A DNA stretch of 63,842 nucleotides, filler included, from Octopus bimaculoides (lineage: Eukaryota): NCBI RefSeq assembly GCF_001194135.2. It is 6 parts of 6 records of this genome, joined end to end, with 100 filler letters (N's around TTAATTAATTAA, not from the genome) between each part and the next. Parts side by side here need not be neighbours in the genome. Positions count along the whole stretch, not along the records: positions 1 to 23,061 come from NC_069004.1; 5 more parts are not named here. One strand, 5' to 3'. Position numbers and translations under genes: made by a program. The notes under the pieces were generated by a model, which saw only the letters and a program-made list of their open reading frames with translations, had not been told where the DNA came from and made no database searches. Below, piece after piece: positions 10,142-21,690 of this stretch. The first letter of the stretch is position 1, and every line of letters begins with the position of its first letter.

Positions 10142-12193
10142 TCGGTTTTTTATCCTGTCCTTGTTTACGTTGCTTCTTCTTTGTTACTTTACGGCCCCTT
10201 GCTGTTGTCATTTCAGGAGTAAATTCCACTGTATTCCATTTTGGAATCTGTTTAGTTACGAAATAATCATCTGTTGAAACCCACTTATTAGAATCAGTTC
10301 TTTCTGTTGTGGTATATGTATCAACAGTTTTTGTCTGCTCGACTGGGAACCGAGAAGATGTTCTCGTCACTGATTCTCGTGGCTTACATCCATACCCTGG
10401 AACACAGCTTGTAGAAGAATGTTTGGGTTGTTCAAGAACAGTAGTAGAGTCATAGTCTTTGCTTTTTCTGACTCCTGCTGTTGTCGGCACGTTAGGGTTG
10501 GTCGGAAACACGACCGGTGTTGAATAGAGTCGTGTCGATTCAAGGACTGAATCTACATCTTTAGTTTTTAATACATGGTGAGTCGTTGATGAGAATGAAG
10601 GCCGGTACCTTTCACTGCTGCGAGATGGCAGCAGGATGTGAGAGGAAGAAGAGATCATTTCTTGCCGTTGAGATGATAGTCTGTGAAGCATCGATGTTAA
10701 GTTCTGCTTATGACTGCTGATATCTCTGCTTGCAATTGGTAAACGACTTTCAGACGAACTAGGCATTAAAGTCGAATAATCACTTCTATGTGATGACGGC
10801 CTGAGGTCTGTGTACATATGATCAAATGTGTGAGTATGTGATGGTTTGGGGTAGAAACTATCCCTGCTGCTTGATGATGATGTTGGTCTAATTTGTTCTG
10901 ATGTCCGATCGACTCTTCTATGTGATTGTTTAACCCCTGTCGAGAAAAGATCAATTGATTTGGTCAATGGCTTAATTTCTGATGACGTTTCAACTCTGCC
11001 GTGTGATGGTCTAACATGTAAAGATGAATAACTCATGCTGAGTGATGGTCTAATGCTCACGGGATGCTCTGATCTATGATATGACTGATCAACAGAATGT
11101 GAAGGGTTAATAGTCACATGAATGTTGTCATGCGTTGTAATAGAATCAATCACATGCGATGGTTTAAGCTTTATAGATGAATGTTCATATAGTATATGAG
11201 TTGGTTTAAGAGGTACAGACGAGTATTCGTGCCTTTCGGATGATTTGTGTCCAGTAGGCGGATGGTAAGGTTTGCTTCGAGAAGAATCGACATGAAAAGA
11301 AGATGAAGAAGGAATTCGACTCCTTGATATATTGATTTTATATGATTGTGATTGGCTGATATGAGAATGTATTACACTGCTGACTGGGAATTTCAAGTGT
11401 ACAGAAGACTGATCAACACTGCTAAATGGCTTAAACACTGTAGAACTGGATCCATCAAGTGTCGGGAATGGTTGTCTATACAGAGAAGAATGGTTGCTGA
11501 TATGTGATGGCTTAAGACCAATAGATGTATCATTGACTTTAAGAGATGGTTGATGTATTATATGCGACTGACTACTGCTATGAGCTGGCTTAATATCAAC
11601 ATAAGAGTGACCACTTCTACTCTGTGATGGTTCCACATGTACGGTGGGGGATCGACCATCAATTTGTGAGTCCACTTCAGAATGACCACTTTTGCTACTC
11701 GATGGCTGAAGAGATACAGAAGAATGACCACCAATTTGTGAATCTATATAAGAATGACCACTCAAAATACGTGTTGGTGTTGGTCTTACTGGTATCGAAG
11801 AAGAAGAATCTCTGGAACTCTGTGACGCTTTATGTGTTACAGAAGCACGTGATGAAGACATGGTAACAAGCGGTAATTCAATTGATGTCAATAAGTCAAT
11901 GGGGACCATTCCGCTTGGCCAAATGACTGGAGATACAGTGCTCGAGCTTGGCGTTACCGTTTCTTCGTATGTCGTACTTTGTGGAACATTCCGTATCGTA
12001 ATTTCACTCTCTTCGAAATAAAACGTGTTCGTGTCCGTCTGGTCAACATACAATGTCTTCAGAACCGGTGTGGATTCTCTAATGATGCTGCTCTCTGATG
12101 GCTTCAATGTTATTTCTGATGTAATATCTTCATCTTCGTCAATATCTTCCTCACCAGATCCAGACCCAGACCCAGAACCATAATATTCCAGAT
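10142..12193 (-). CDS. DAG1: Dystroglycan coding exon 3 (aa 491-1175): Ser/His/Thr/Pro-rich mucin-like exon, 2052 nt, phase 1-1
   Basis: Acceptor cctttaatcttgcAG|AT CTG GAA and donor CCG A|GTAAGT at 10141. A 674-codon stop-free ORF covers it, and phases match both neighbouring exons. Confidence 0.85.
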
Positions 12194-12269: not shown

Positions 12270-12950
12270 TAATGACTCTTCATATCATTACAGTTACTAT
12301 GATGGCATAAATTATGTAAATGACTATTTGTATCATTACTATAACTGTGATGGCATAAATTATGTAAATGACTATTTGTATCATTACTATAACTGTGATG
12401 GCATAAATTATGTAAATGACTATCTGTATCATTACTATAACAGTGATGACATAAATTATGTAAATAACTTTTTGTATCATTATTATTGTGATGGCATAAA
12501 TTATATAAATGACTGTTTGTATCATTACTATCTGTGATAGCATAAATTATGTAAATGATTATTTGTATCATTACTATAACTGTGGTAGTATAAATTATGT
12601 AAATGACTATTTGTATCATTACTATAAGAGTGATGATATAAATTATGTAAATAACTTTTTGTATCATTATTATTGTGATGGCATAAATTATGTAAATTAC
12701 TGTTTGTATCATTATTATATCTCTGATAGCATAAATTGTGTAACTAACTATATTGTTACTGTTACTATGATGACATAAATTATGTAAATGTCTGTATCAT
12801 TACTGTAACTGTAATAGCATAAATTACATAAATAACAGTATTGTTGCTGTTATGTGATAGCATAAATTATGTAAGTAACTGTATTGATATTCTTACTGTG
12901 ATGGCATAATTTATGCAAATGGCTTTGTATTATTGTTGCAATGGTTTAAA
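12270..12950. repeat. 48-bp minisatellite filling most of dystroglycan intron 2
   Basis: Unit GATGGCATAAATTATGTAAATGACTATTTGTATCATTACTATAACTGT starts at 12301, 12349, 12397 and 12445. It continues as 45-48 bp variants that degenerate toward 12950, about 14 units in all. Confidence 0.92.
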
Positions 12951-13087: not shown

Positions 13088-14348
13088 CTGTTCCAGAATC
13101 TTCATCTCCATCAGTGTCTGTAGCTAGTGTTGGTGTGGCTGCAATTAAAGGAGTCATAGGCGGTTTAGTAATGTCTTTTCCCAAATTGGTTGGTGGAGTT
13201 ATAGGTTCTTCTGTGGTAAATTCACTGAAACGAGACACGTCTCCTGATCCAGAGATTTCATAGATACCTGTGTGATACTTGCTGCTTTCATGCCACTTTA
13301 CCATGGTGGTATATCTATCTGGCTGGCTAGTTTTTTTGGGTGTGTATTCCGAATATGTGAATGAGGATGTCGGATGCAACTTATCTGCAGACACAGTTTT
13401 CGATTTCTCAAACAGACTTTCTGAATGGGCCGGCACTGTGAAACTTTTTGTTGGTTCGACTTCAATTACTGATTCTCTTGAAGACACAAATACAAGACTT
13501 GATTCTTTGGTTGGAATAATTTTATCCGTCATATGATCTCTTTTAGTCTCATACTCTTTCGATTCTAATTTCTGCAAGCTTTTCAGTAACTCAGTTTTAA
13601 GCGAAGCAGAGTACAGTGACGATGAAGACTTGACGATCTTAGTTGCAGGAACCACCTCTATTTGAGGAGTTGGCGTTGGCGTCGAGTTTTTGGGTATTGC
13701 ACGTTTTTTACGTGACCGATGTTGTTTGGAAGGGTTTACCAATGCCGATATATACCATCCTACGACATCGTAACCAACCTCCCTAGTCAGACGCCCACCT
13801 TCAACATTGTGTTGCAACACTTGCATGAAAAGACTCACCTCTTTAAACACGCCACATGGTACCCTCCATGTTAATTCTGTCACATTTGGAAGCACCGCAT
13901 CGGTGTTGCCACGTCCAGATGCCAAGATGCTGAAACTTTGTGATTTGTCTTGCATTGAAAAGAGTTCTTTGCTTGCCGTAATTGTTATCAATGTCTCATT
14001 GATATCAAGGAAATCGGCAAGGTTTCTCATAATATTATACCTGGCCAAGGCATCCAACTTATACAAATTAACAGCGAAGATTAGAGTTGTCTGAATAAGA
14101 TTAATACCTTTGTAACAGGTTTTCTCTGGTTTCTTCTTACTACTGTGTTCATGGCTCATATAATATGGCTTTACCTCAAGGTAAAAAATATCAGAAATGA
14201 ACTCACACTTCTTCGCTTGGTCTGATAAAGTTATTTTAATATACAAACCAAATCCATCATGCATCGTTGGTACGGCTATCAACTTCCGTGTGGTTTCTTC
14301 AAAGGTAATCCACTGTGGCAGCGTTTGATTTTGAGATGCTGCGGTTAC
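13088..14348 (-). CDS. DAG1: Dystroglycan coding exon 2 (aa 71-490): rest of N-terminal domains, furin site and start of mucin-like region
   Basis: Acceptor ttttattttacAG|GTA ACC GCA gives VTAASQNQTLPQW, resembling human VSAAGKEALPSW at what I recall as the same phase-0 intron position. LTWRVPC and VGYDVVGWYI match the alpha-DG N-terminal domain, followed by RKKR and TPTPTP. Donor ACA G|GTAAGA (phase 1). The frame is open throughout. Confidence 0.93.
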
Positions 14349-14394
14349 CTGTAAAATAAAAGCAAAGCAGTTACTCTTTTATTCTTTTATTCTT

Positions 14395-14793
14395 TTACTT
14401 GTTTCAGTCATTTGACTGCGGCCATGCTGGAGCAACGCCTTTAGTCGAAACAAATCAACCCCAGGACTTAGTCTTTGTAAGCCTAGTACTTATTCTATCA
14501 GTCTCTTTTGCCGAACTGCTAANNNNNNNNNNNNNNNNNNNNNNNNNNNNNNNNNNNNNNNNNNNNNNNNNNNNNNNNNNNNNNNNNNNNNNNNNNNNNN
14601 NNNNNNNNNNNNNNNNNNNNNNNNNNNNNNNNNNNNNNNNNNNNNNNNNNNNNNNNNNNNNNNNNNNNNNNNNNNNNNNNNNNNNNNNNNNNNNNNNNNN
14701 NNNNNNNNNNNNNNNNNNNNNNNNNNNNNNNNNNNNNNNNNNNNNNNNNNNNNNNNNNNNNNNNNNNNNNNNNNNNNNNNNNNNNNNNNNNNN

Positions 14794-14828
<35 letters not shown>

Positions 14829-14984
14829 CAGGCTTCTTCTAGTTTCCTTCTACCTAATTCACTCACAAGGCATTGGTCGGCCCGAGGTTATAGTAGAAGT
14901 CACTTGCCTAAGGTGCCACGCAGTGGGACTGAACCTGGAACCATGTGGTTGAGAAGCAAGCTTCTTACCACACAACCACGCCTC
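14395..14984 (-). mobile_element. SINE family B, both halves around an N gap and (TA)n, in dystroglycan intron 1
   Basis: Tail half 14395-14522 and head half 14825-14984 match other copies. Confidence 0.8.
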
Positions 14985-15332
14985 AGCCTATTTTATTTAT
15001 TTTATATTTTAACAATCCCAAAAGCATAAAAAAATGAAAATAACAAAACCAACCCTTGATATGATTCGAACTCAGAATGCAGACATCCAGAACATATATC
15101 GCAAGACATCTCATCCAGTGCTGTAACTAACAATTGTATCAATCCTTGGCCCTGAACTAGTATTTTATTTATTAATCTCAAAGGGATGAAAAACACAAGA
15201 ATGATCTTAGTGTGATTTGAACTCAAAACACAAAGATCCGAAACATAGAGCACAAGACATTCTATCAACTCCACCACTTCCTTAACAAACTCAAAGACTG
15301 TAGTAAAAGACAGAAGCTACCAAATTACTTAC

Positions 15333-15542
15333 ATCGATTAAACAGTTCTTCTTGCACTTCAAGACGGTCTCTGGAATCTTGTAGACAAATAGTTTCCCTG
15401 TTATGAGCTTTTGATCTGGGATTCCTTCCAAAATTGAAGGGCAGTCATGTGCTCTGGTGAAATTCTGTACACCCCACACCAAAGAACTGCAAAGAATGGT
15501 TGATAAGAAAAGCACTGTATATCTTTCTGCGAACCACCACAT
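15333..15542 (-). CDS. DAG1: Dystroglycan coding exon 1 (aa 1-70): signal peptide and start of N-terminal Ig/cadherin-like domain
   Basis: ATG at 15542 starts MWWFAERYTVLFLSTILCSSLVWG, a hydrophobic signal peptide. It is followed by IPDQKLITGKLFVYKIP, which resembles human IPDGTAVVGRSFRVTIP (recalled). The exon ends at GAT|GTAAGT, a phase-0 donor at 15332. Confidence 0.9.
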
Positions 15543-16127
15543 TTTGTTTTGTCTCTTCTTGTCTCGGTTCCTTGTTTCGTCTCGTCTTGGCACTTGGTTG
15601 TTTTGGTTTTGTTCTGTTTTTNNNNNNNNNNNNNNNNNNNNNNNNNNNNNNNNNNNNNNNNNNNNNNNNNNNNNNNNNNNNNNNNNNNNNNNNNNNNNNN
15701 NNNNNNNNNNNNNNNNNNNNNNNNNNNNNNNNNNNNNNNNNNNNNNNNNNNNNNNNNNNNNNNNNNNNNNNNNNNNNNNNNNNNNNNNNNNNNNNNNNNN
15801 NNNNNNNNNNNNNNNNNNNNNNNNNNNNNNNNNNNNNNNNNNNNNNNNNNNNNNNNNNNNNNNNNNNNNNNNNNNNNNNNNNNNNNNNNNNNNNNNNNNN
15901 NNNNNNNNNNNNNNNNNNNNNNNNNNNNNNNNNNNNNNNNNNNNNNNNNNNNNNNNNNNNNNNNNNNNNNNNNNNNNNNNNNNNNNNNNNNNNNNNNNNN
16001 NNNNNNNNNNNNNNNNNNNNNNNNNNNNNNNNNNNNNNNNNNNNNNNNNNNNNNNNNNNNNNNNNNNNNNNNNNNNNNNNNNNNNNNNNNNNNNNNNNNN
16101 NNNNNNNNNNNNNNNNNNNNNNNNNNN

Positions 16128-17129: not shown

Positions 17130-17450
17130 GTAAACCTTGCATNNNNNNNNNNNNNNNNNNNNNNNNNNNNNNNNNNNNNNNNNNNNNNNNNNNNNNNNNN
17201 NNNNNNNNNNNNNNNNNNNNNNNNNNNNNNNNNNNNNNNNNNNNNNNNNNNNNNNNNNNNNNNNNNNNNNNNNNNNNNNNNNNNNNNNNNNNNNNNNNNN
17301 NNNNNNNNNNNNNNNNNNNNNNNNNNNNNNNNNNNNNNNNNNNNNNNNNNNNNNNNNNNNNNNNNNNNNNNNNNNNNNNNNNNNNNNNNNNNNNNNNNNN
17401 NNNNNNNNNNNNNNNNNNNNNNNNNNNNNNNNNNNNNNNNNNNNNNNNNN

Positions 17451-17499
<49 letters not shown>

Positions 17500-17905
17500 G
17501 CATATATGTATATATATGCACACACACAATTCAGGAGATGCAAACATAGAACTCAAAATATGAGTGTATGTATATTTTTATTAATATTTACCAGAAGTAA
17601 GAGTGACACGCACATATTCATACATACACTTATATGTATACACACACACACACATATATGTGTGTGTGTATGTGTATCTTCATACACATACAAATACATT
17701 AATTCAAATATTCATAAACATATGCAATAAATATATAAACCATGTATACAGCTACACACACTTTCACACATGTATACTCACACACACACACACACAAATA
17801 CACACATACACACACACACACACACACAAATACACATACACACACACAAATGCGTACACACACACACGCACACACACACACAAACAAACAAACACCCGTG
17901 CATAC

Positions 17906-18100
17906 ATTTCATTTGCAAATTCAAAGAATTTTCATCGAGATATAAACCAACACGATGTAATCCCAATCCATCTATCACTCTTTGGCGCTGCCGCCAGCCT
18001 CCTTTCCTGCTCTCCTCCCTCCATTGCAGACCCAACCAATTCTTCGTTATCAAGTCTGGAGGCTGCCAAATAATTATTTCCTTTTCTTTCTTTTTTAATA
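17906..18100 (-). other. Possible non-coding upstream (5' UTR) exon of dystroglycan
   Basis: Unique purine-rich sequence between microsatellites, with a possible donor AAAT|GTATGC at 17905. No recognisable product and no transcript evidence. Confidence 0.2.
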
Positions 18101-20250: not shown

Positions 20251-20457
20251 TGATAAAAATATACTATATGACGTTGTAAAATAAAAGCAAATAAAATTTG
20301 AGGATGTATCAGCCTTGATATTCTCTTCCCAACCACATGGTTCTAGGTTCAATCTCCCACTGTGTGGCACCTTTGGCAAGTGTCTTCTACTATAGCCTCA
20401 AGCTGACCAAAACCTTGTGAGTGGATTTGGTAAAAAGAAACTGAGAGAAGCCTGTTG

Positions 20458-20494
<37 letters not shown>

Positions 20495-21399
20495 GTGTGT
20501 GTGTTTGTGTTTGTCCCCATAACTTAGAAGTTCAGTAAGGGAGACCGATAGAATAAGTACCAGGCTTACAAAAATAAGTCCTGGGATCGATTTATTCAAC
20601 TAAAATCCTTTAAGGTGGTGCTCCAGCATGGCCACAGTCAAATGACTGAAAGAAGTAATAAAAGTATATACATGTCTATGTATATATATATATATATATA
20701 NNNNNNNNNNNNNNNNNNNNNNNNNNNNNNNNNNNNNNNNNNNNNNNNNNNNNNNNNNNNNNNNNNNNNNNNNNNNNNNNNNNNNNNNNNNNNNNNNNNN
20801 NNNNNNNNNNNNNNNNNNNNNNNNNNNNNNACTATCTTTCCATCTCTCTCTTTTCTACAGCTTCTACAAGTGGACTCTGGGGAGAAAGAAAAATACCACA
20901 CATTTAAGAACACCTCTTTTTAAAAATTTTATTTCACGAGCTGGGGTGTGGATGCCAGGGGAGGGAAGGTGGAGAGATACCTTAAAAATGTTAGCATTTC
21001 TTTTATTTTTATATTTCTTTTATTTACTTATTATTTTTTTTTTTTTAATTTTATTTTGCTTAAATTCAGTGATTGAAAGTTGATTATGAAATTCTTCTAA
21101 TTAGTGGAATGTACCGGTTATTACTCTTATGTTATTGCACGATATAATCAACACCCACTCTTTAATTCCTTCAGGATATACCATTTCCTGTCCCCCTCCT
21201 TTCTCCTCCTTTCTCTGTGTGTGTATATGAATATACATATATGCATGTGGCTATGTGGTAAGAGGTTTGCTTCCCAACCACATGGTTTTAGGTTCAGTCC
21301 CACTGTGTGAAACCTTCGGCAACTATCTTCTAGTATTGCCTCAAGCCAACCAAAGTTTTGTGAGTGGATTTGTTATTTGGAAACTGAAAGAAGCCATTA

Positions 21400-21690
21400 G
21401 ATAGATAGATAGAGAGATAGATAGATAGATAGATGGATGGATGGATGGACGGACGGACGGACAGGTATATAGATAGATAGACAGACAGATACACTGTGAT
21501 AGAAAGATAGATAGATAGATAGGTAGATAGATAGACAGACAGATAGACAGGCACACAGACAGACTGATAGGTAGGTAGGTAGATAGGTAAATAGGTAGGT
21601 AGGTACATAGGTAAATAGATAGAGAGATAAACAGAGAGACAGACAGATAGATAGTACTAGACAAAGACAGACAGACAGACAGATAGGCTG
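21400..21690. repeat. Compound (GATA)/(GACA)/(GGAT)/(GGTA) tetranucleotide microsatellite
   Basis: Seen directly. Confidence 0.95.

What the first reader, a model, noticed from the sequence alone, without database searches (positions are those of the whole stretch)
10142..12193. Giant dystroglycan with a skippable 684-codon mucin cassette; skipping gives an 878-aa protein of vertebrate size
Seen: the four exons give 1562 aa. Exon 3 is 2052 nt (divisible by 3) and phase 1 at both ends. Joining exon 2 (…ACA G) to exon 4 (AA CAC…) gives GAA in frame and 878 aa, close to the approximately 895 aa of vertebrate DAG1. Established: the Drosophila Dg mucin-like domain lies on an alternatively spliced exon. 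Inference: one locus may switch between a compact DG and a form with an approximately 890-aa mucin stalk (aa 287-1177, versus about 170 aa in human), changing the reach and ligand range of the receptor.
Basis: partly seen in the sequence, partly recalled or inferred. Interest (0 to 1): 0.78.

Follow-up and report, generated by a model that had tools for sequence, protein, structure and literature searches.

The report
Octopus dystroglycan with long mucin exon
This is the already-annotated Octopus bimaculoides dystroglycan-family gene, and its 2052-base mucin-like exon is a real, conserved coding exon, but nothing found here shows that it is ever skipped.

Summary
On the minus strand, four GT-AG exons give 1562 aa. 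Exon 3 (10142-12193) is 2052 nt and phase 1 at both ends. Joining exon 2 to exon 4 gives GAA in frame and 878 aa. The protein has all the dystroglycan hallmarks and is identical to RefSeq XP_014772582.1 ("uncharacterized protein LOC106870861", no isoform label).

Exon 3 is real coding sequence. It has the same boundaries and phases in O. sinensis, Argonauta and a decapodiform. All indels are in frame and dN/dS is 0.32. Spliced transcripts of two other cephalopods include it.

Skipping is unsupported. Five predicted skip proteins are absent from a 15-billion-protein collection that does hold the short Drosophila Dg isoforms. Splice sites are strong and flanking-intron conservation is unremarkable. 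The test is indirect.

The conserved furin/TPTPTP glycosylation site lies in exon 2, so skipping would not remove it. Dystroglycans of similar or greater length exist in gastropods and a nemertean.

Published surveys describe a compact octopus dystroglycan at a different locus, which I could not find.

Exon 3 is most likely a constitutive, disordered stalk exon. Interest is modest.

The parts
15333..15542 (-). Exon 1: ATG, signal peptide (aa 1-24, 15471-15542) and the first half of the IG1 domain. It ends at the universal phase-0 IG1 intron (LID|VTAAS, matching human VIK|VSTAG).
14349..15332 (-). Intron 1, the conserved IG1 intron. It contains an assembly gap at 14523-14793, so its true length is unknown. 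The O. sinensis counterpart is 1992 nt.
13088..14348 (-). Exon 2 (1261 nt, aa 71-490): the rest of IG1, the S6-like domain, the furin site and the first 204 aa of mucin-like sequence.
13665..13712 (-). RKKR furin-type site followed by TPTPTP (aa 283-298). It aligns with human RIRRQIHATPTPV, the matriglycan attachment threonines. It lies in exon 2, not in the putative cassette.
   Evidence: PMC4582122
12194..13087 (-). Intron 2 (894 nt, phase 1). It is present in octopods and decapodiforms and absent at this position in the gastropod Babylonia. About 650 nt of it is a 48-nt minisatellite (12271-12921).
10142..12193 (-). Exon 3 (2052 nt, aa 491-1174, phase 1/1): Ser/Thr/Pro/His-rich, predicted disordered. 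This is the putative cassette.
12126..12191 (-). Start of exon 3: LEYYGSGSGSGSGEEDIDEDED. The SG repeat with its acidic flank is invariant across octopods and the decapodiform and looks like a glycosaminoglycan attachment site.
12009..12056 (-). Conserved island TLYVDQTDTNTFYFEE (NxFYFEE is invariant). It is the only stretch of exon 3 that the model gives any secondary structure, a small beta hairpin.
10143..10199 (-). Basic patch RGRKVTKKKQRKQGQDKKP at the end of exon 3, just before IG2. It is found in cephalopods only.
9192..10141 (-). Intron 3 (950 nt, phase 1). It sits at the same codon position and phase as an intron of the gastropod Babylonia areolata dystroglycan. It contains a dispersed SINE-like repeat.
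8026..9191 (-). Exon 4 (coding part, aa 1175-1562 plus stop): IG2 and the DAG1/SEA-like domain, the Gly-Ser alpha/beta cleavage site (8659-8703), the transmembrane helix (8380-8448), and a cytoplasmic tail with PPPPYRLPPPY (8056-8088).

Best explanation
The window holds the Octopus bimaculoides dystroglycan-family gene LOC106870861. Exon 3 is most likely a constitutively included coding exon.

It encodes about 680 aa of an intrinsically disordered, probably heavily O-glycosylated stalk that extends the mucin-like region begun in exon 2. This stalk places the N-terminal, glycan-bearing part of alpha-dystroglycan far from the IG2/SEA-like domain and the membrane.

Shown: the gene model, family membership, conservation of the exon and its frame across cephalopods, purifying selection, and its presence in spliced mRNA of related species.

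Inferred: constitutive inclusion in O. bimaculoides, glycosylation, and the stalk or spacer function.

The exon became a separate unit because cephalopods have an extra phase-1 intron (intron 2) inside the mucin region. Intron 3, in front of IG2, is older and shared with a gastropod.
For: Gene model and identity:
- Four GT-AG exons give 1562 aa, identical to XP_014772582.1 / A0A0L8HG49.
- Pfam DAG1 scores 73 bits and a_DG1_N2 26.3 bits.
- PDB alpha- and beta-dystroglycan chains match at E = 1e-32 and 3e-31.
- The furin+TPT site, the Gly-Ser cleavage site, the TM helix and the PPPY tail are all present.

Conservation of exon 3:
- Boundaries and phase 1/1 are the same in O. sinensis (1878 nt), Argonauta (2196 nt) and a decapodiform (1413 nt).
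- All seven indels between O. bimaculoides and O. sinensis are in frame.
- dN/dS is 0.32, against dS of 0.16.

Expression:
- An octopod mRNA contig (SRR3401912, 5113 nt) aligns to the window in exactly four exon blocks, including exon 3.
- Decapodiform full-length transcripts with the exon occur on more than 85 contigs.

No skip form seen:
- The RefSeq names carry no isoform label.
- The exact skip proteins of 878, 872, 883, 914 and 915 aa are not in the collection.
- Short Drosophila Dg isoforms are in that collection, which serves as a positive control.

Disorder: AlphaFold2 gives mean pLDDT 36 with no secondary structure except one hairpin. S+T is 31% and P is 7.6%.
Against: - No read-level RNA-seq data for O. 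bimaculoides could be examined.
- Exact-sequence look-ups miss skip transcripts that are rare, polymorphic or incompletely assembled. De Bruijn assemblers also tend to keep only the dominant path.
- The exon is symmetric (phase 1/1), so skipping would keep the frame.
- A large mucin cassette exon is alternatively spliced in Drosophila Dg.
- The last 100 nt of intron 2 are slightly better conserved (95%) than other intron sequence (about 91%).
- If exon 3 arose by insertion into an older phase-1 intron, it may have begun as an alternative exon.
Confidence: 0.75

Rival explanations
1. Exon 3 is a regulated cassette. Tissue- or stage-specific skipping yields an 878-aa compact dystroglycan alongside the 1562-aa form, in parallel with Drosophila Dg-C versus Dg-A/B.
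For: - The exon is 2052 nt and phase 1/1, and skipping gives an in-frame GAA.
- Symmetry is kept in four other cephalopods.
- Drosophila offers a precedent, a 795-nt alternatively spliced mucin exon.
- The exon 1+2+4 product keeps every folded domain and a 204-aa mucin-like region of vertebrate size.
- The intron 2 acceptor flank is 95% identical to O. sinensis.
Against: - No skip product was found for five species or variants in the 15-billion collection, while the short Drosophila isoforms are there.
- The RefSeq models have a single isoform.
- All assembled transcripts include the exon.
- Both ends have consensus-strength splice sites and the flanking introns are short, about 0.9 kb.
- The downstream intron flank is not conserved beyond about 23 nt.
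- Symmetry has a 1/3 prior and is maintained by constitutive coding alone.
- The equivalent gastropod mucin region is not a separate exon.
Confidence: 0.12
2. The compact octopus dystroglycan comes from a separate gene, not from exon skipping. On this view octopus has two dystroglycan-family genes: a canonical two-coding-exon gene with a short mucin region, and this four-exon, long-mucin gene.
For: - Brancaccio & Adams 2017 (PMC5216574) list the O. bimaculoides DG gene as Ocbimv22032669m.g. It has a 14,288-nt pre-ATG intron, an 8418-nt IG1 intron and a single 2310-nt last coding exon.
- These values cannot be mapped onto this locus, whose introns are 984, 894 and 950 nt and whose CDS is 4689 nt.
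- Adams & Brancaccio 2015 (PMC4582122) state that mollusc DGs, including O. vulgaris, have mucin regions shorter than vertebrate DG. That does not fit this 890-aa region.
Against: - I could not find that second protein with the searches available.
- The published figures could come from an early, inaccurate gene model or a partial transcript.
- This locus has the universal IG1 intron and a gastropod-type cytoplasmic tail, as expected of the true orthologue.
Confidence: 0.4
3. Exon 3 is an annotation artefact: an intronic or repeat-derived open frame wrongly joined into the model.
For: The sequence is low-complexity and Ser-rich, and nothing outside cephalopods is clearly homologous to it.
Against: - A 684-codon open frame with consensus splice sites.
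- In-frame indels only, and dN/dS of 0.32.
- Invariant motifs from octopus to decapodiform.
- Contiguous with exons 2 and 4 in spliced mRNA contigs.
Confidence: 0.02

Closest known systems
Vertebrate dystroglycan (DAG1)
   Same: - Signal peptide, IG1, S6-like domain, and a furin site followed by TPTP.
- Central mucin-like region, IG2, and a SEA-like domain with a Gly-Ser autoproteolysis site.
- Single TM helix and a C-terminal PPxY.
- Phase-0 IG1 intron at the identical position.
   Different: - The mucin-like region is about 890 aa, against about 170 aa in human.
- It has lower Pro content and is His-rich.
- Two extra phase-1 introns lie in or after the mucin region.
- The tail lacks the KGIPIIFADELED-type motif and carries about 9 residues after PPPY.
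Drosophila Dystroglycan (Dg) with alternatively spliced mucin exon(s) 8/9
   Same: A large mucin-like segment lies on its own exon, the exon length is a multiple of 3, and the introns delimiting it were gained in that lineage.
   Different: - In Drosophila, skipping is documented and removes the mucin-like domain.
- Here no skip transcript was found.
- The exon holds only the distal three quarters of the mucin-like region.
- The conserved TPTPTP site stays in exon 2.
Long-mucin dystroglycans of other lophotrochozoans: Babylonia areolata XP_076448167.1 (1837 aa), Plakobranchus ocellatus GFO15407.1 (1899 aa), Lineus longissimus XP_064632762.1 (2182 aa)
   Same: - Same domain order, with a spacer of 900-1500 aa between the N-terminal domains and IG2.
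- The gastropod proteins share a ...PPPYRLPP(P/S)Y+tail type of C-terminus.
- Babylonia has a phase-1 intron in front of IG2 at the same codon.
   Different: - In Babylonia the N-terminal domains and the whole mucin region lie on one 3966-nt exon, with no intron 2.
- The SG-repeat motifs and the basic patch are absent.

Membership tests
Dystroglycan (DAG1/Dg) | N-terminal IG1 plus S6-like domain | tested here: met
   Pfam a_DG1_N2 scores 26.3 bits against a cut-off of 26.1. PDB alpha-DG N-terminal domain chains 5llk, 1u2c and others match at E = 2e-12 to 3e-10 over aa 31-281.
Dystroglycan (DAG1/Dg) | [quoted passage not shown] | tested here: met
   RKKR|AIPKNSTPTPTP at aa 283-298 aligns with human RIRR|QIHATPTPV. 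The same pattern occurs in amphioxus, a hemichordate, Nematostella and a gastropod.
Dystroglycan (DAG1/Dg) | Central Ser/Thr/Pro-rich mucin-like region that is O-glycosylated | tested here: inconclusive
   Composition fits: S+T is 29-31% and P is 7.6-8.8% over aa 287-1174. The exon 3 part (aa 492-1174) is predicted disordered, with mean pLDDT 36. Glycosylation itself cannot be tested with these tools.
Dystroglycan (DAG1/Dg) | IG2 plus DAG1/SEA-like domain with a Gly-Ser alpha/beta maturation site | tested here: met
   Pfam DAG1 scores 73.1 bits. Beta-DG chain 8yt8_O matches at E = 2.8e-31. TRPG|SLIVTWTNN has G, S, W and N invariant in an alignment of eight phylogenetically distant DGs.
Dystroglycan (DAG1/Dg) | Single transmembrane helix and a cytoplasmic tail ending in a PPxY dystrophin-binding motif | tested here: met
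   The TM helix is AIIPTVIAVAIAIFIVVIILLIC and the tail contains PPPPYRLPPPY, 9 residues from the C-terminus. Binding itself was not tested.
Dystroglycan (DAG1/Dg) | Universal phase-0 intron inside IG1 (human K95|V96) | tested here: met
   Intron 1 falls at LID|VTAAS, which aligns with human VIK|VSTAG. The position is defined in PMC5216574.
Dystroglycan (DAG1/Dg) | Being the single orthologue in the genome | tested here: inconclusive
   The literature lists a different O. bimaculoides locus. That protein was not recovered. The octopus genome itself cannot be searched with these tools.
Alternatively spliced mucin cassette (as in Drosophila Dg) | Mucin-like sequence on a discrete exon whose removal keeps the reading frame | tested here: met
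   The exon is 2052 nt, phase 1/1, and the junction codon is GAA.
Alternatively spliced mucin cassette (as in Drosophila Dg) | Transcripts both with and without the exon exist | tested here: inconclusive
   With the exon: yes, in related species. Without it: none of five exact skip proteins is in the collection and RefSeq shows no isoform labels. The test is indirect and has low power for rare isoforms.
Alternatively spliced mucin cassette (as in Drosophila Dg) | The cassette carries the whole mucin-like, laminin-binding glycan region | tested here: not met
   204 aa of mucin-like sequence and the conserved TPTPTP motif lie in exon 2.
Proteoglycan core protein (Ser-Gly glycosaminoglycan attachment) | Repeated Ser-Gly next to acidic residues, carrying GAG chains | tested here: inconclusive
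   The motif is present and conserved: YYGSGSGSGSGEEDIDEDED and EISGSGD occur in all five cephalopods and in none of the ten non-cephalopod DGs examined. GAG substitution cannot be tested with these tools.

The most novel reading that the evidence does not exclude
Exon 3 is a cephalopod-specific phase 1-1 module that adds a long stalk carrying glycosaminoglycan chains on its invariant SG repeat. It is included in a tissue- or stage-regulated way. One locus would then yield a compact, vertebrate-like dystroglycan and a giant mucin/proteoglycan hybrid, convergent with the Drosophila Dg mucin cassette.
Probability: 0.1. Interest if true: 0.55.

Novelty: new member of a known kind. Interest (0 to 1): 0.3.

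Why it matters
Dystroglycan is the central laminin receptor of muscle and nerve, and the length and glycosylation of its mucin region set its ligand binding.

This locus shows that cephalopods have a dystroglycan with a mucin-like region about five times longer than the human one. It has its own exon, conserved SG-repeat motifs and a basic patch.

That contradicts published surveys, which describe mollusc (including octopus) dystroglycans as short-mucin proteins with a canonical two-coding-exon gene.

Resolving whether octopus has one or two such genes, and whether the long exon is ever skipped, would correct that picture. It would also test whether mucin cassettes evolved twice.

As it stands, the gene is already annotated and the splicing idea is unproven, so the immediate value is modest.

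Tried and rejected
- The word-indexed homologue searches with the full and the skip protein returned only 5 and 2 hits. Low-complexity words swamped the candidate list, so they say little about skip isoforms.
- A profile search with eight distant DG C-termini aimed to find a second octopus DG. It returned mostly Drosophila isoforms and no octopus protein. It was still useful as a positive control.
- I looked for the compact octopus DG among the 150 best representatives. P0113 and P0159 have duplicated IG2 modules and are not it. P0136 (757 aa) comes from an unnamed ENA assembly and shares no repeats with the octopus loci.
- P0022 (384 aa) might have been a transcript revealing the upstream junction. 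It is a genomic contig that begins in intron 3.
- The decapodiform genomic locus L006 has no exon 3 within 8 kb upstream of exon 4, so it could not be used to compare intron flanks.
- Flanking-intron conservation as a cassette signature: divergence between O. bimaculoides and O. sinensis is too low (about 9%), and a repeat insertion interrupts intron 3, so there is no usable signal.
- No tRNA or Rfam matches were found in the window.
It was repeated with four rows.
- I could not decide between exon insertion and intron gain as the origin of exon 3. The gastropod sequence in front of IG2 shows no similarity to either end of exon 3.

Full report
**Observation.** The finding's coordinates are exact. 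On the minus strand, exon 1 (15542-15333, 210 nt), exon 2 (14348-13088, 1261 nt), exon 3 (12193-10142, 2052 nt) and exon 4 (9191-8026, 1166 nt with the stop) are all bounded by GT-AG introns with near-consensus sites. They translate without interruption to 1562 aa. Exon 3 is 684 codons long and phase 1 at both ends. Joining exon 2 to exon 4 makes a GAA codon and an 878-aa protein. Divisibility by three has a one-in-three prior, and any constitutively coding exon keeps it, so it does not by itself argue for skipping.

**Identity.** The protein matches Pfam DAG1 (73 bits) and the alpha-dystroglycan N-terminal domain 2 (26.3 bits, just above the cut-off). It also matches solved alpha- and beta-dystroglycan chains (E = 1e-32 and 3e-31). 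It has these features:
- a signal peptide;
- an RKKR furin-type site followed by TPTPTP, which aligns with human RIRR-QIHATPTPV;
- the Gly-Ser maturation site (TRPG|SLIVTWTNN);
- one transmembrane helix;
- a tail containing PPPPYRLPPPY.

Intron 1 falls at LID|VTAAS. This is the position and phase of the universal IG1 intron, human K95|V96. The 1562-aa sequence is identical to RefSeq XP_014772582.1 and UniProt A0A0L8HG49 of Octopus bimaculoides. These are named only 'uncharacterized protein LOC106870861' and 'Peptidase S72 domain-containing protein', with no isoform label. The gene model is therefore already public, but it is not named as dystroglycan.

**Is exon 3 a real exon?** Yes.
- The O. 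sinensis locus (L001) has the same four exons with identical splice-site contexts, and its exon 3 is 1878 nt.
- All seven indels between the two species are in frame. dN/dS is 0.32 in exon 3, 0.17 in the mucin-like part of exon 2 and 0.02 in exon 4, with dS of 0.16-0.29.
- Argonauta hians has a 2196-nt exon 3 in phase 1/1.
- Exon-sized genomic reading frames from a decapodiform show the same boundaries, and its exon 3 is 471 codons.
- A 5113-nt mRNA contig from another octopod (SRR3401912) aligns to the window in exactly four blocks that coincide with the four exons.
- Decapodiform full-length transcripts containing the exon occur on more than 85 contigs.

**What exon 3 encodes.**
- It is 21% Ser, 9% Thr, 7.6% Pro and 5.7% His, with degenerate KPSH/RPSH and SGHSY(V/I)D motifs but no clean tandem repeat.
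- AlphaFold2 on a four-sequence alignment gives mean pLDDT 36 and no secondary structure except a small hairpin. The alignment is shallow, but the result fits an extended disordered stalk.
- Across five cephalopods the middle of the exon varies greatly in length and sequence. Three islands are conserved: D-(L/M)-x-Y-x-GSGSGSG followed by an acidic run at the very start, NxFYFEE about 55 residues in, and a Lys/Arg-rich patch just before IG2.
- The SG repeat with acidic flanks resembles the established glycosaminoglycan attachment consensus (my own knowledge, not tested). Together with a second SGSG in exon 2, it is present in all five cephalopods and absent from the ten non-cephalopod dystroglycans checked.

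**Is it skipped?** I found no support, and the indirect evidence points the other way.
- The exact 878-aa skip protein is not in a collection of about 15 billion proteins that includes transcriptome assemblies. Neither are the equivalent skip proteins of O. sinensis (872 aa), the second octopod (883 aa) or the decapodiform (914 and 915 aa).
- The same collection does hold the short, mucin-less Drosophila Dg isoforms (913-920 aa) under 'isoform X' names. Annotated skip forms are therefore represented when they exist.
- The RefSeq names of the O. bimaculoides and O. sinensis proteins carry no isoform label.
- The splice sites of exon 3 are as strong as those of its neighbours, and its flanking introns are short.
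- Flanking-intron conservation is unremarkable. The last 100 nt of intron 2 are 95% identical, against about 91% for other intron sequence. Only about 23 nt of intron 3 align before a repeat insertion.
- These tests are weak against rare or tissue-restricted skipping. Read-level RNA-seq could not be examined here.

**Consequences if it were skipped.**
- The conserved furin/TPTPTP site and 204 aa of mucin-like sequence are in exon 2. A skip form would therefore keep the main candidate matriglycan site.
- It would lose the stalk, the SG repeat and the basic patch. That would change reach, and possibly GAG decoration, rather than switching the mucin domain on and off as in Drosophila.
- In Drosophila a 795-nt alternatively spliced exon encodes the mucin-like domains, which are present only in Dg-C.

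**Comparison and gene history.**
- A full HMMER scan with exon 4 found 716 proteins at E <= 1e-10.
- Among those with the complete dystroglycan architecture, lengths range from about 940 to 2182 aa.
- The long ones include the gastropods Babylonia areolata (1837 aa) and Plakobranchus ocellatus (1899 aa, named dystroglycan) and the nemertean Lineus longissimus (2182 aa). A giant mucin region is therefore not unique to octopus.
- In Babylonia the N-terminal domains and the whole mucin region lie on one 3966-nt exon. A phase-1 intron precedes IG2 at the same codon position as octopus intron 3.
- Intron 3 therefore probably predates the gastropod-cephalopod split, while intron 2 is specific to cephalopods.
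- Whether exon 3 was inserted into the older phase-1 intron or split off by intron gain could not be decided.

**Conflict with the literature.**
- Adams & Brancaccio 2015 state that mollusc dystroglycans, including Octopus vulgaris, have mucin-like regions shorter than in vertebrates (PMC4582122).
- Brancaccio & Adams 2017 list the O. bimaculoides gene as Ocbimv22032669m.g, with an 8418-nt IG1 intron and a single 2310-nt last coding exon (PMC5216574).
- Those figures cannot be mapped onto this locus.

**Verdict.** Exon 3 is best explained as a constitutive, disordered stalk exon of a cephalopod long-mucin dystroglycan (confidence about 0.75). The regulated-cassette reading remains possible (about 0.12) and is easy to test with junction reads. 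Interest is modest. The gene is already annotated and similar long forms exist in other lophotrochozoans. The cephalopod-specific exon, the conserved SG repeats and the disagreement with published surveys are worth a short follow-up.

Noticed in passing
window 12126-12191 and 13233-13262 (minus strand): Two Ser-Gly repeat motifs with acidic flanks (YYGSGSGSGSGEEDIDEDED and EISGSGD) are conserved in all five cephalopod dystroglycans. They are absent from ten non-cephalopod ones. They look like glycosaminoglycan attachment sites, which would make cephalopod dystroglycan a possible part-time proteoglycan.
   Followed up: partly
literature versus this locus (PMC5216574 Table 1; PMC4582122): Published surveys give O. 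bimaculoides dystroglycan as Ocbimv22032669m.g, with two coding exons and a last exon of 2310 nt. They also say that octopus DG has a short mucin region. Neither statement fits this locus, so there is either a second gene or an outdated model.
   Followed up: partly
window 9192-10141 (intron 3) and L007 about 8685-11810: The phase-1 intron in front of the IG2 domain sits at the same codon position in octopus and in the gastropod Babylonia areolata. The published model of a single conserved coding intron in molluscs does not include it.
   Followed up: partly
window 12271-12921: About 650 of the 894 nt of intron 2 are a 48-nt minisatellite of roughly 14 copies at 79% match. The O. sinensis intron aligns to it in several registers.
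   Followed up: no
window 9697-9833, 20355-20452, 21298-21434: Copies of a dispersed SINE-like repeat, one of them inside intron 3. Other interspersed repeats from the window's intergenic and intron 1 regions have several copies in the O. sinensis locus. ARAGORN found no tRNA and there was no Rfam match.
   Followed up: no
window 3812-3992, 6109-7045, 14523-14793, 15622-16127, 17143-17450, 20701-20830: Assembly gaps (runs of N), mostly bordered by TA or CA microsatellites. One lies inside intron 1. One begins 80 nt upstream of the ATG and hides most of the 5' UTR, which is contiguous with the ATG exon for about 290 nt in O. sinensis.
   Followed up: partly
window 10143-10199 (minus strand): A Lys/Arg-rich patch (RGRKVTKKKQRKQGQDKKP; 11-13 basic residues in the last 40) immediately precedes IG2 in cephalopods. 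Gastropod, deuterostome and arthropod dystroglycans have only 0-7 basic residues there.
   Followed up: partly
proteins P0064, P0102, P0126: Very long dystroglycan-architecture proteins in Lineus longissimus (2182 aa, named 'mucin-2-like isoform X1') and two gastropods (1837 and 1899 aa). Most are not named as dystroglycan in the databases.
   Followed up: partly
window 1492-2280 and 17600-18100: Long imperfect (CA)n / (CATA)n microsatellite tracts produce spurious His/Thr-rich and Cys/Val-rich open frames on both strands. They are not genes.
   Followed up: no
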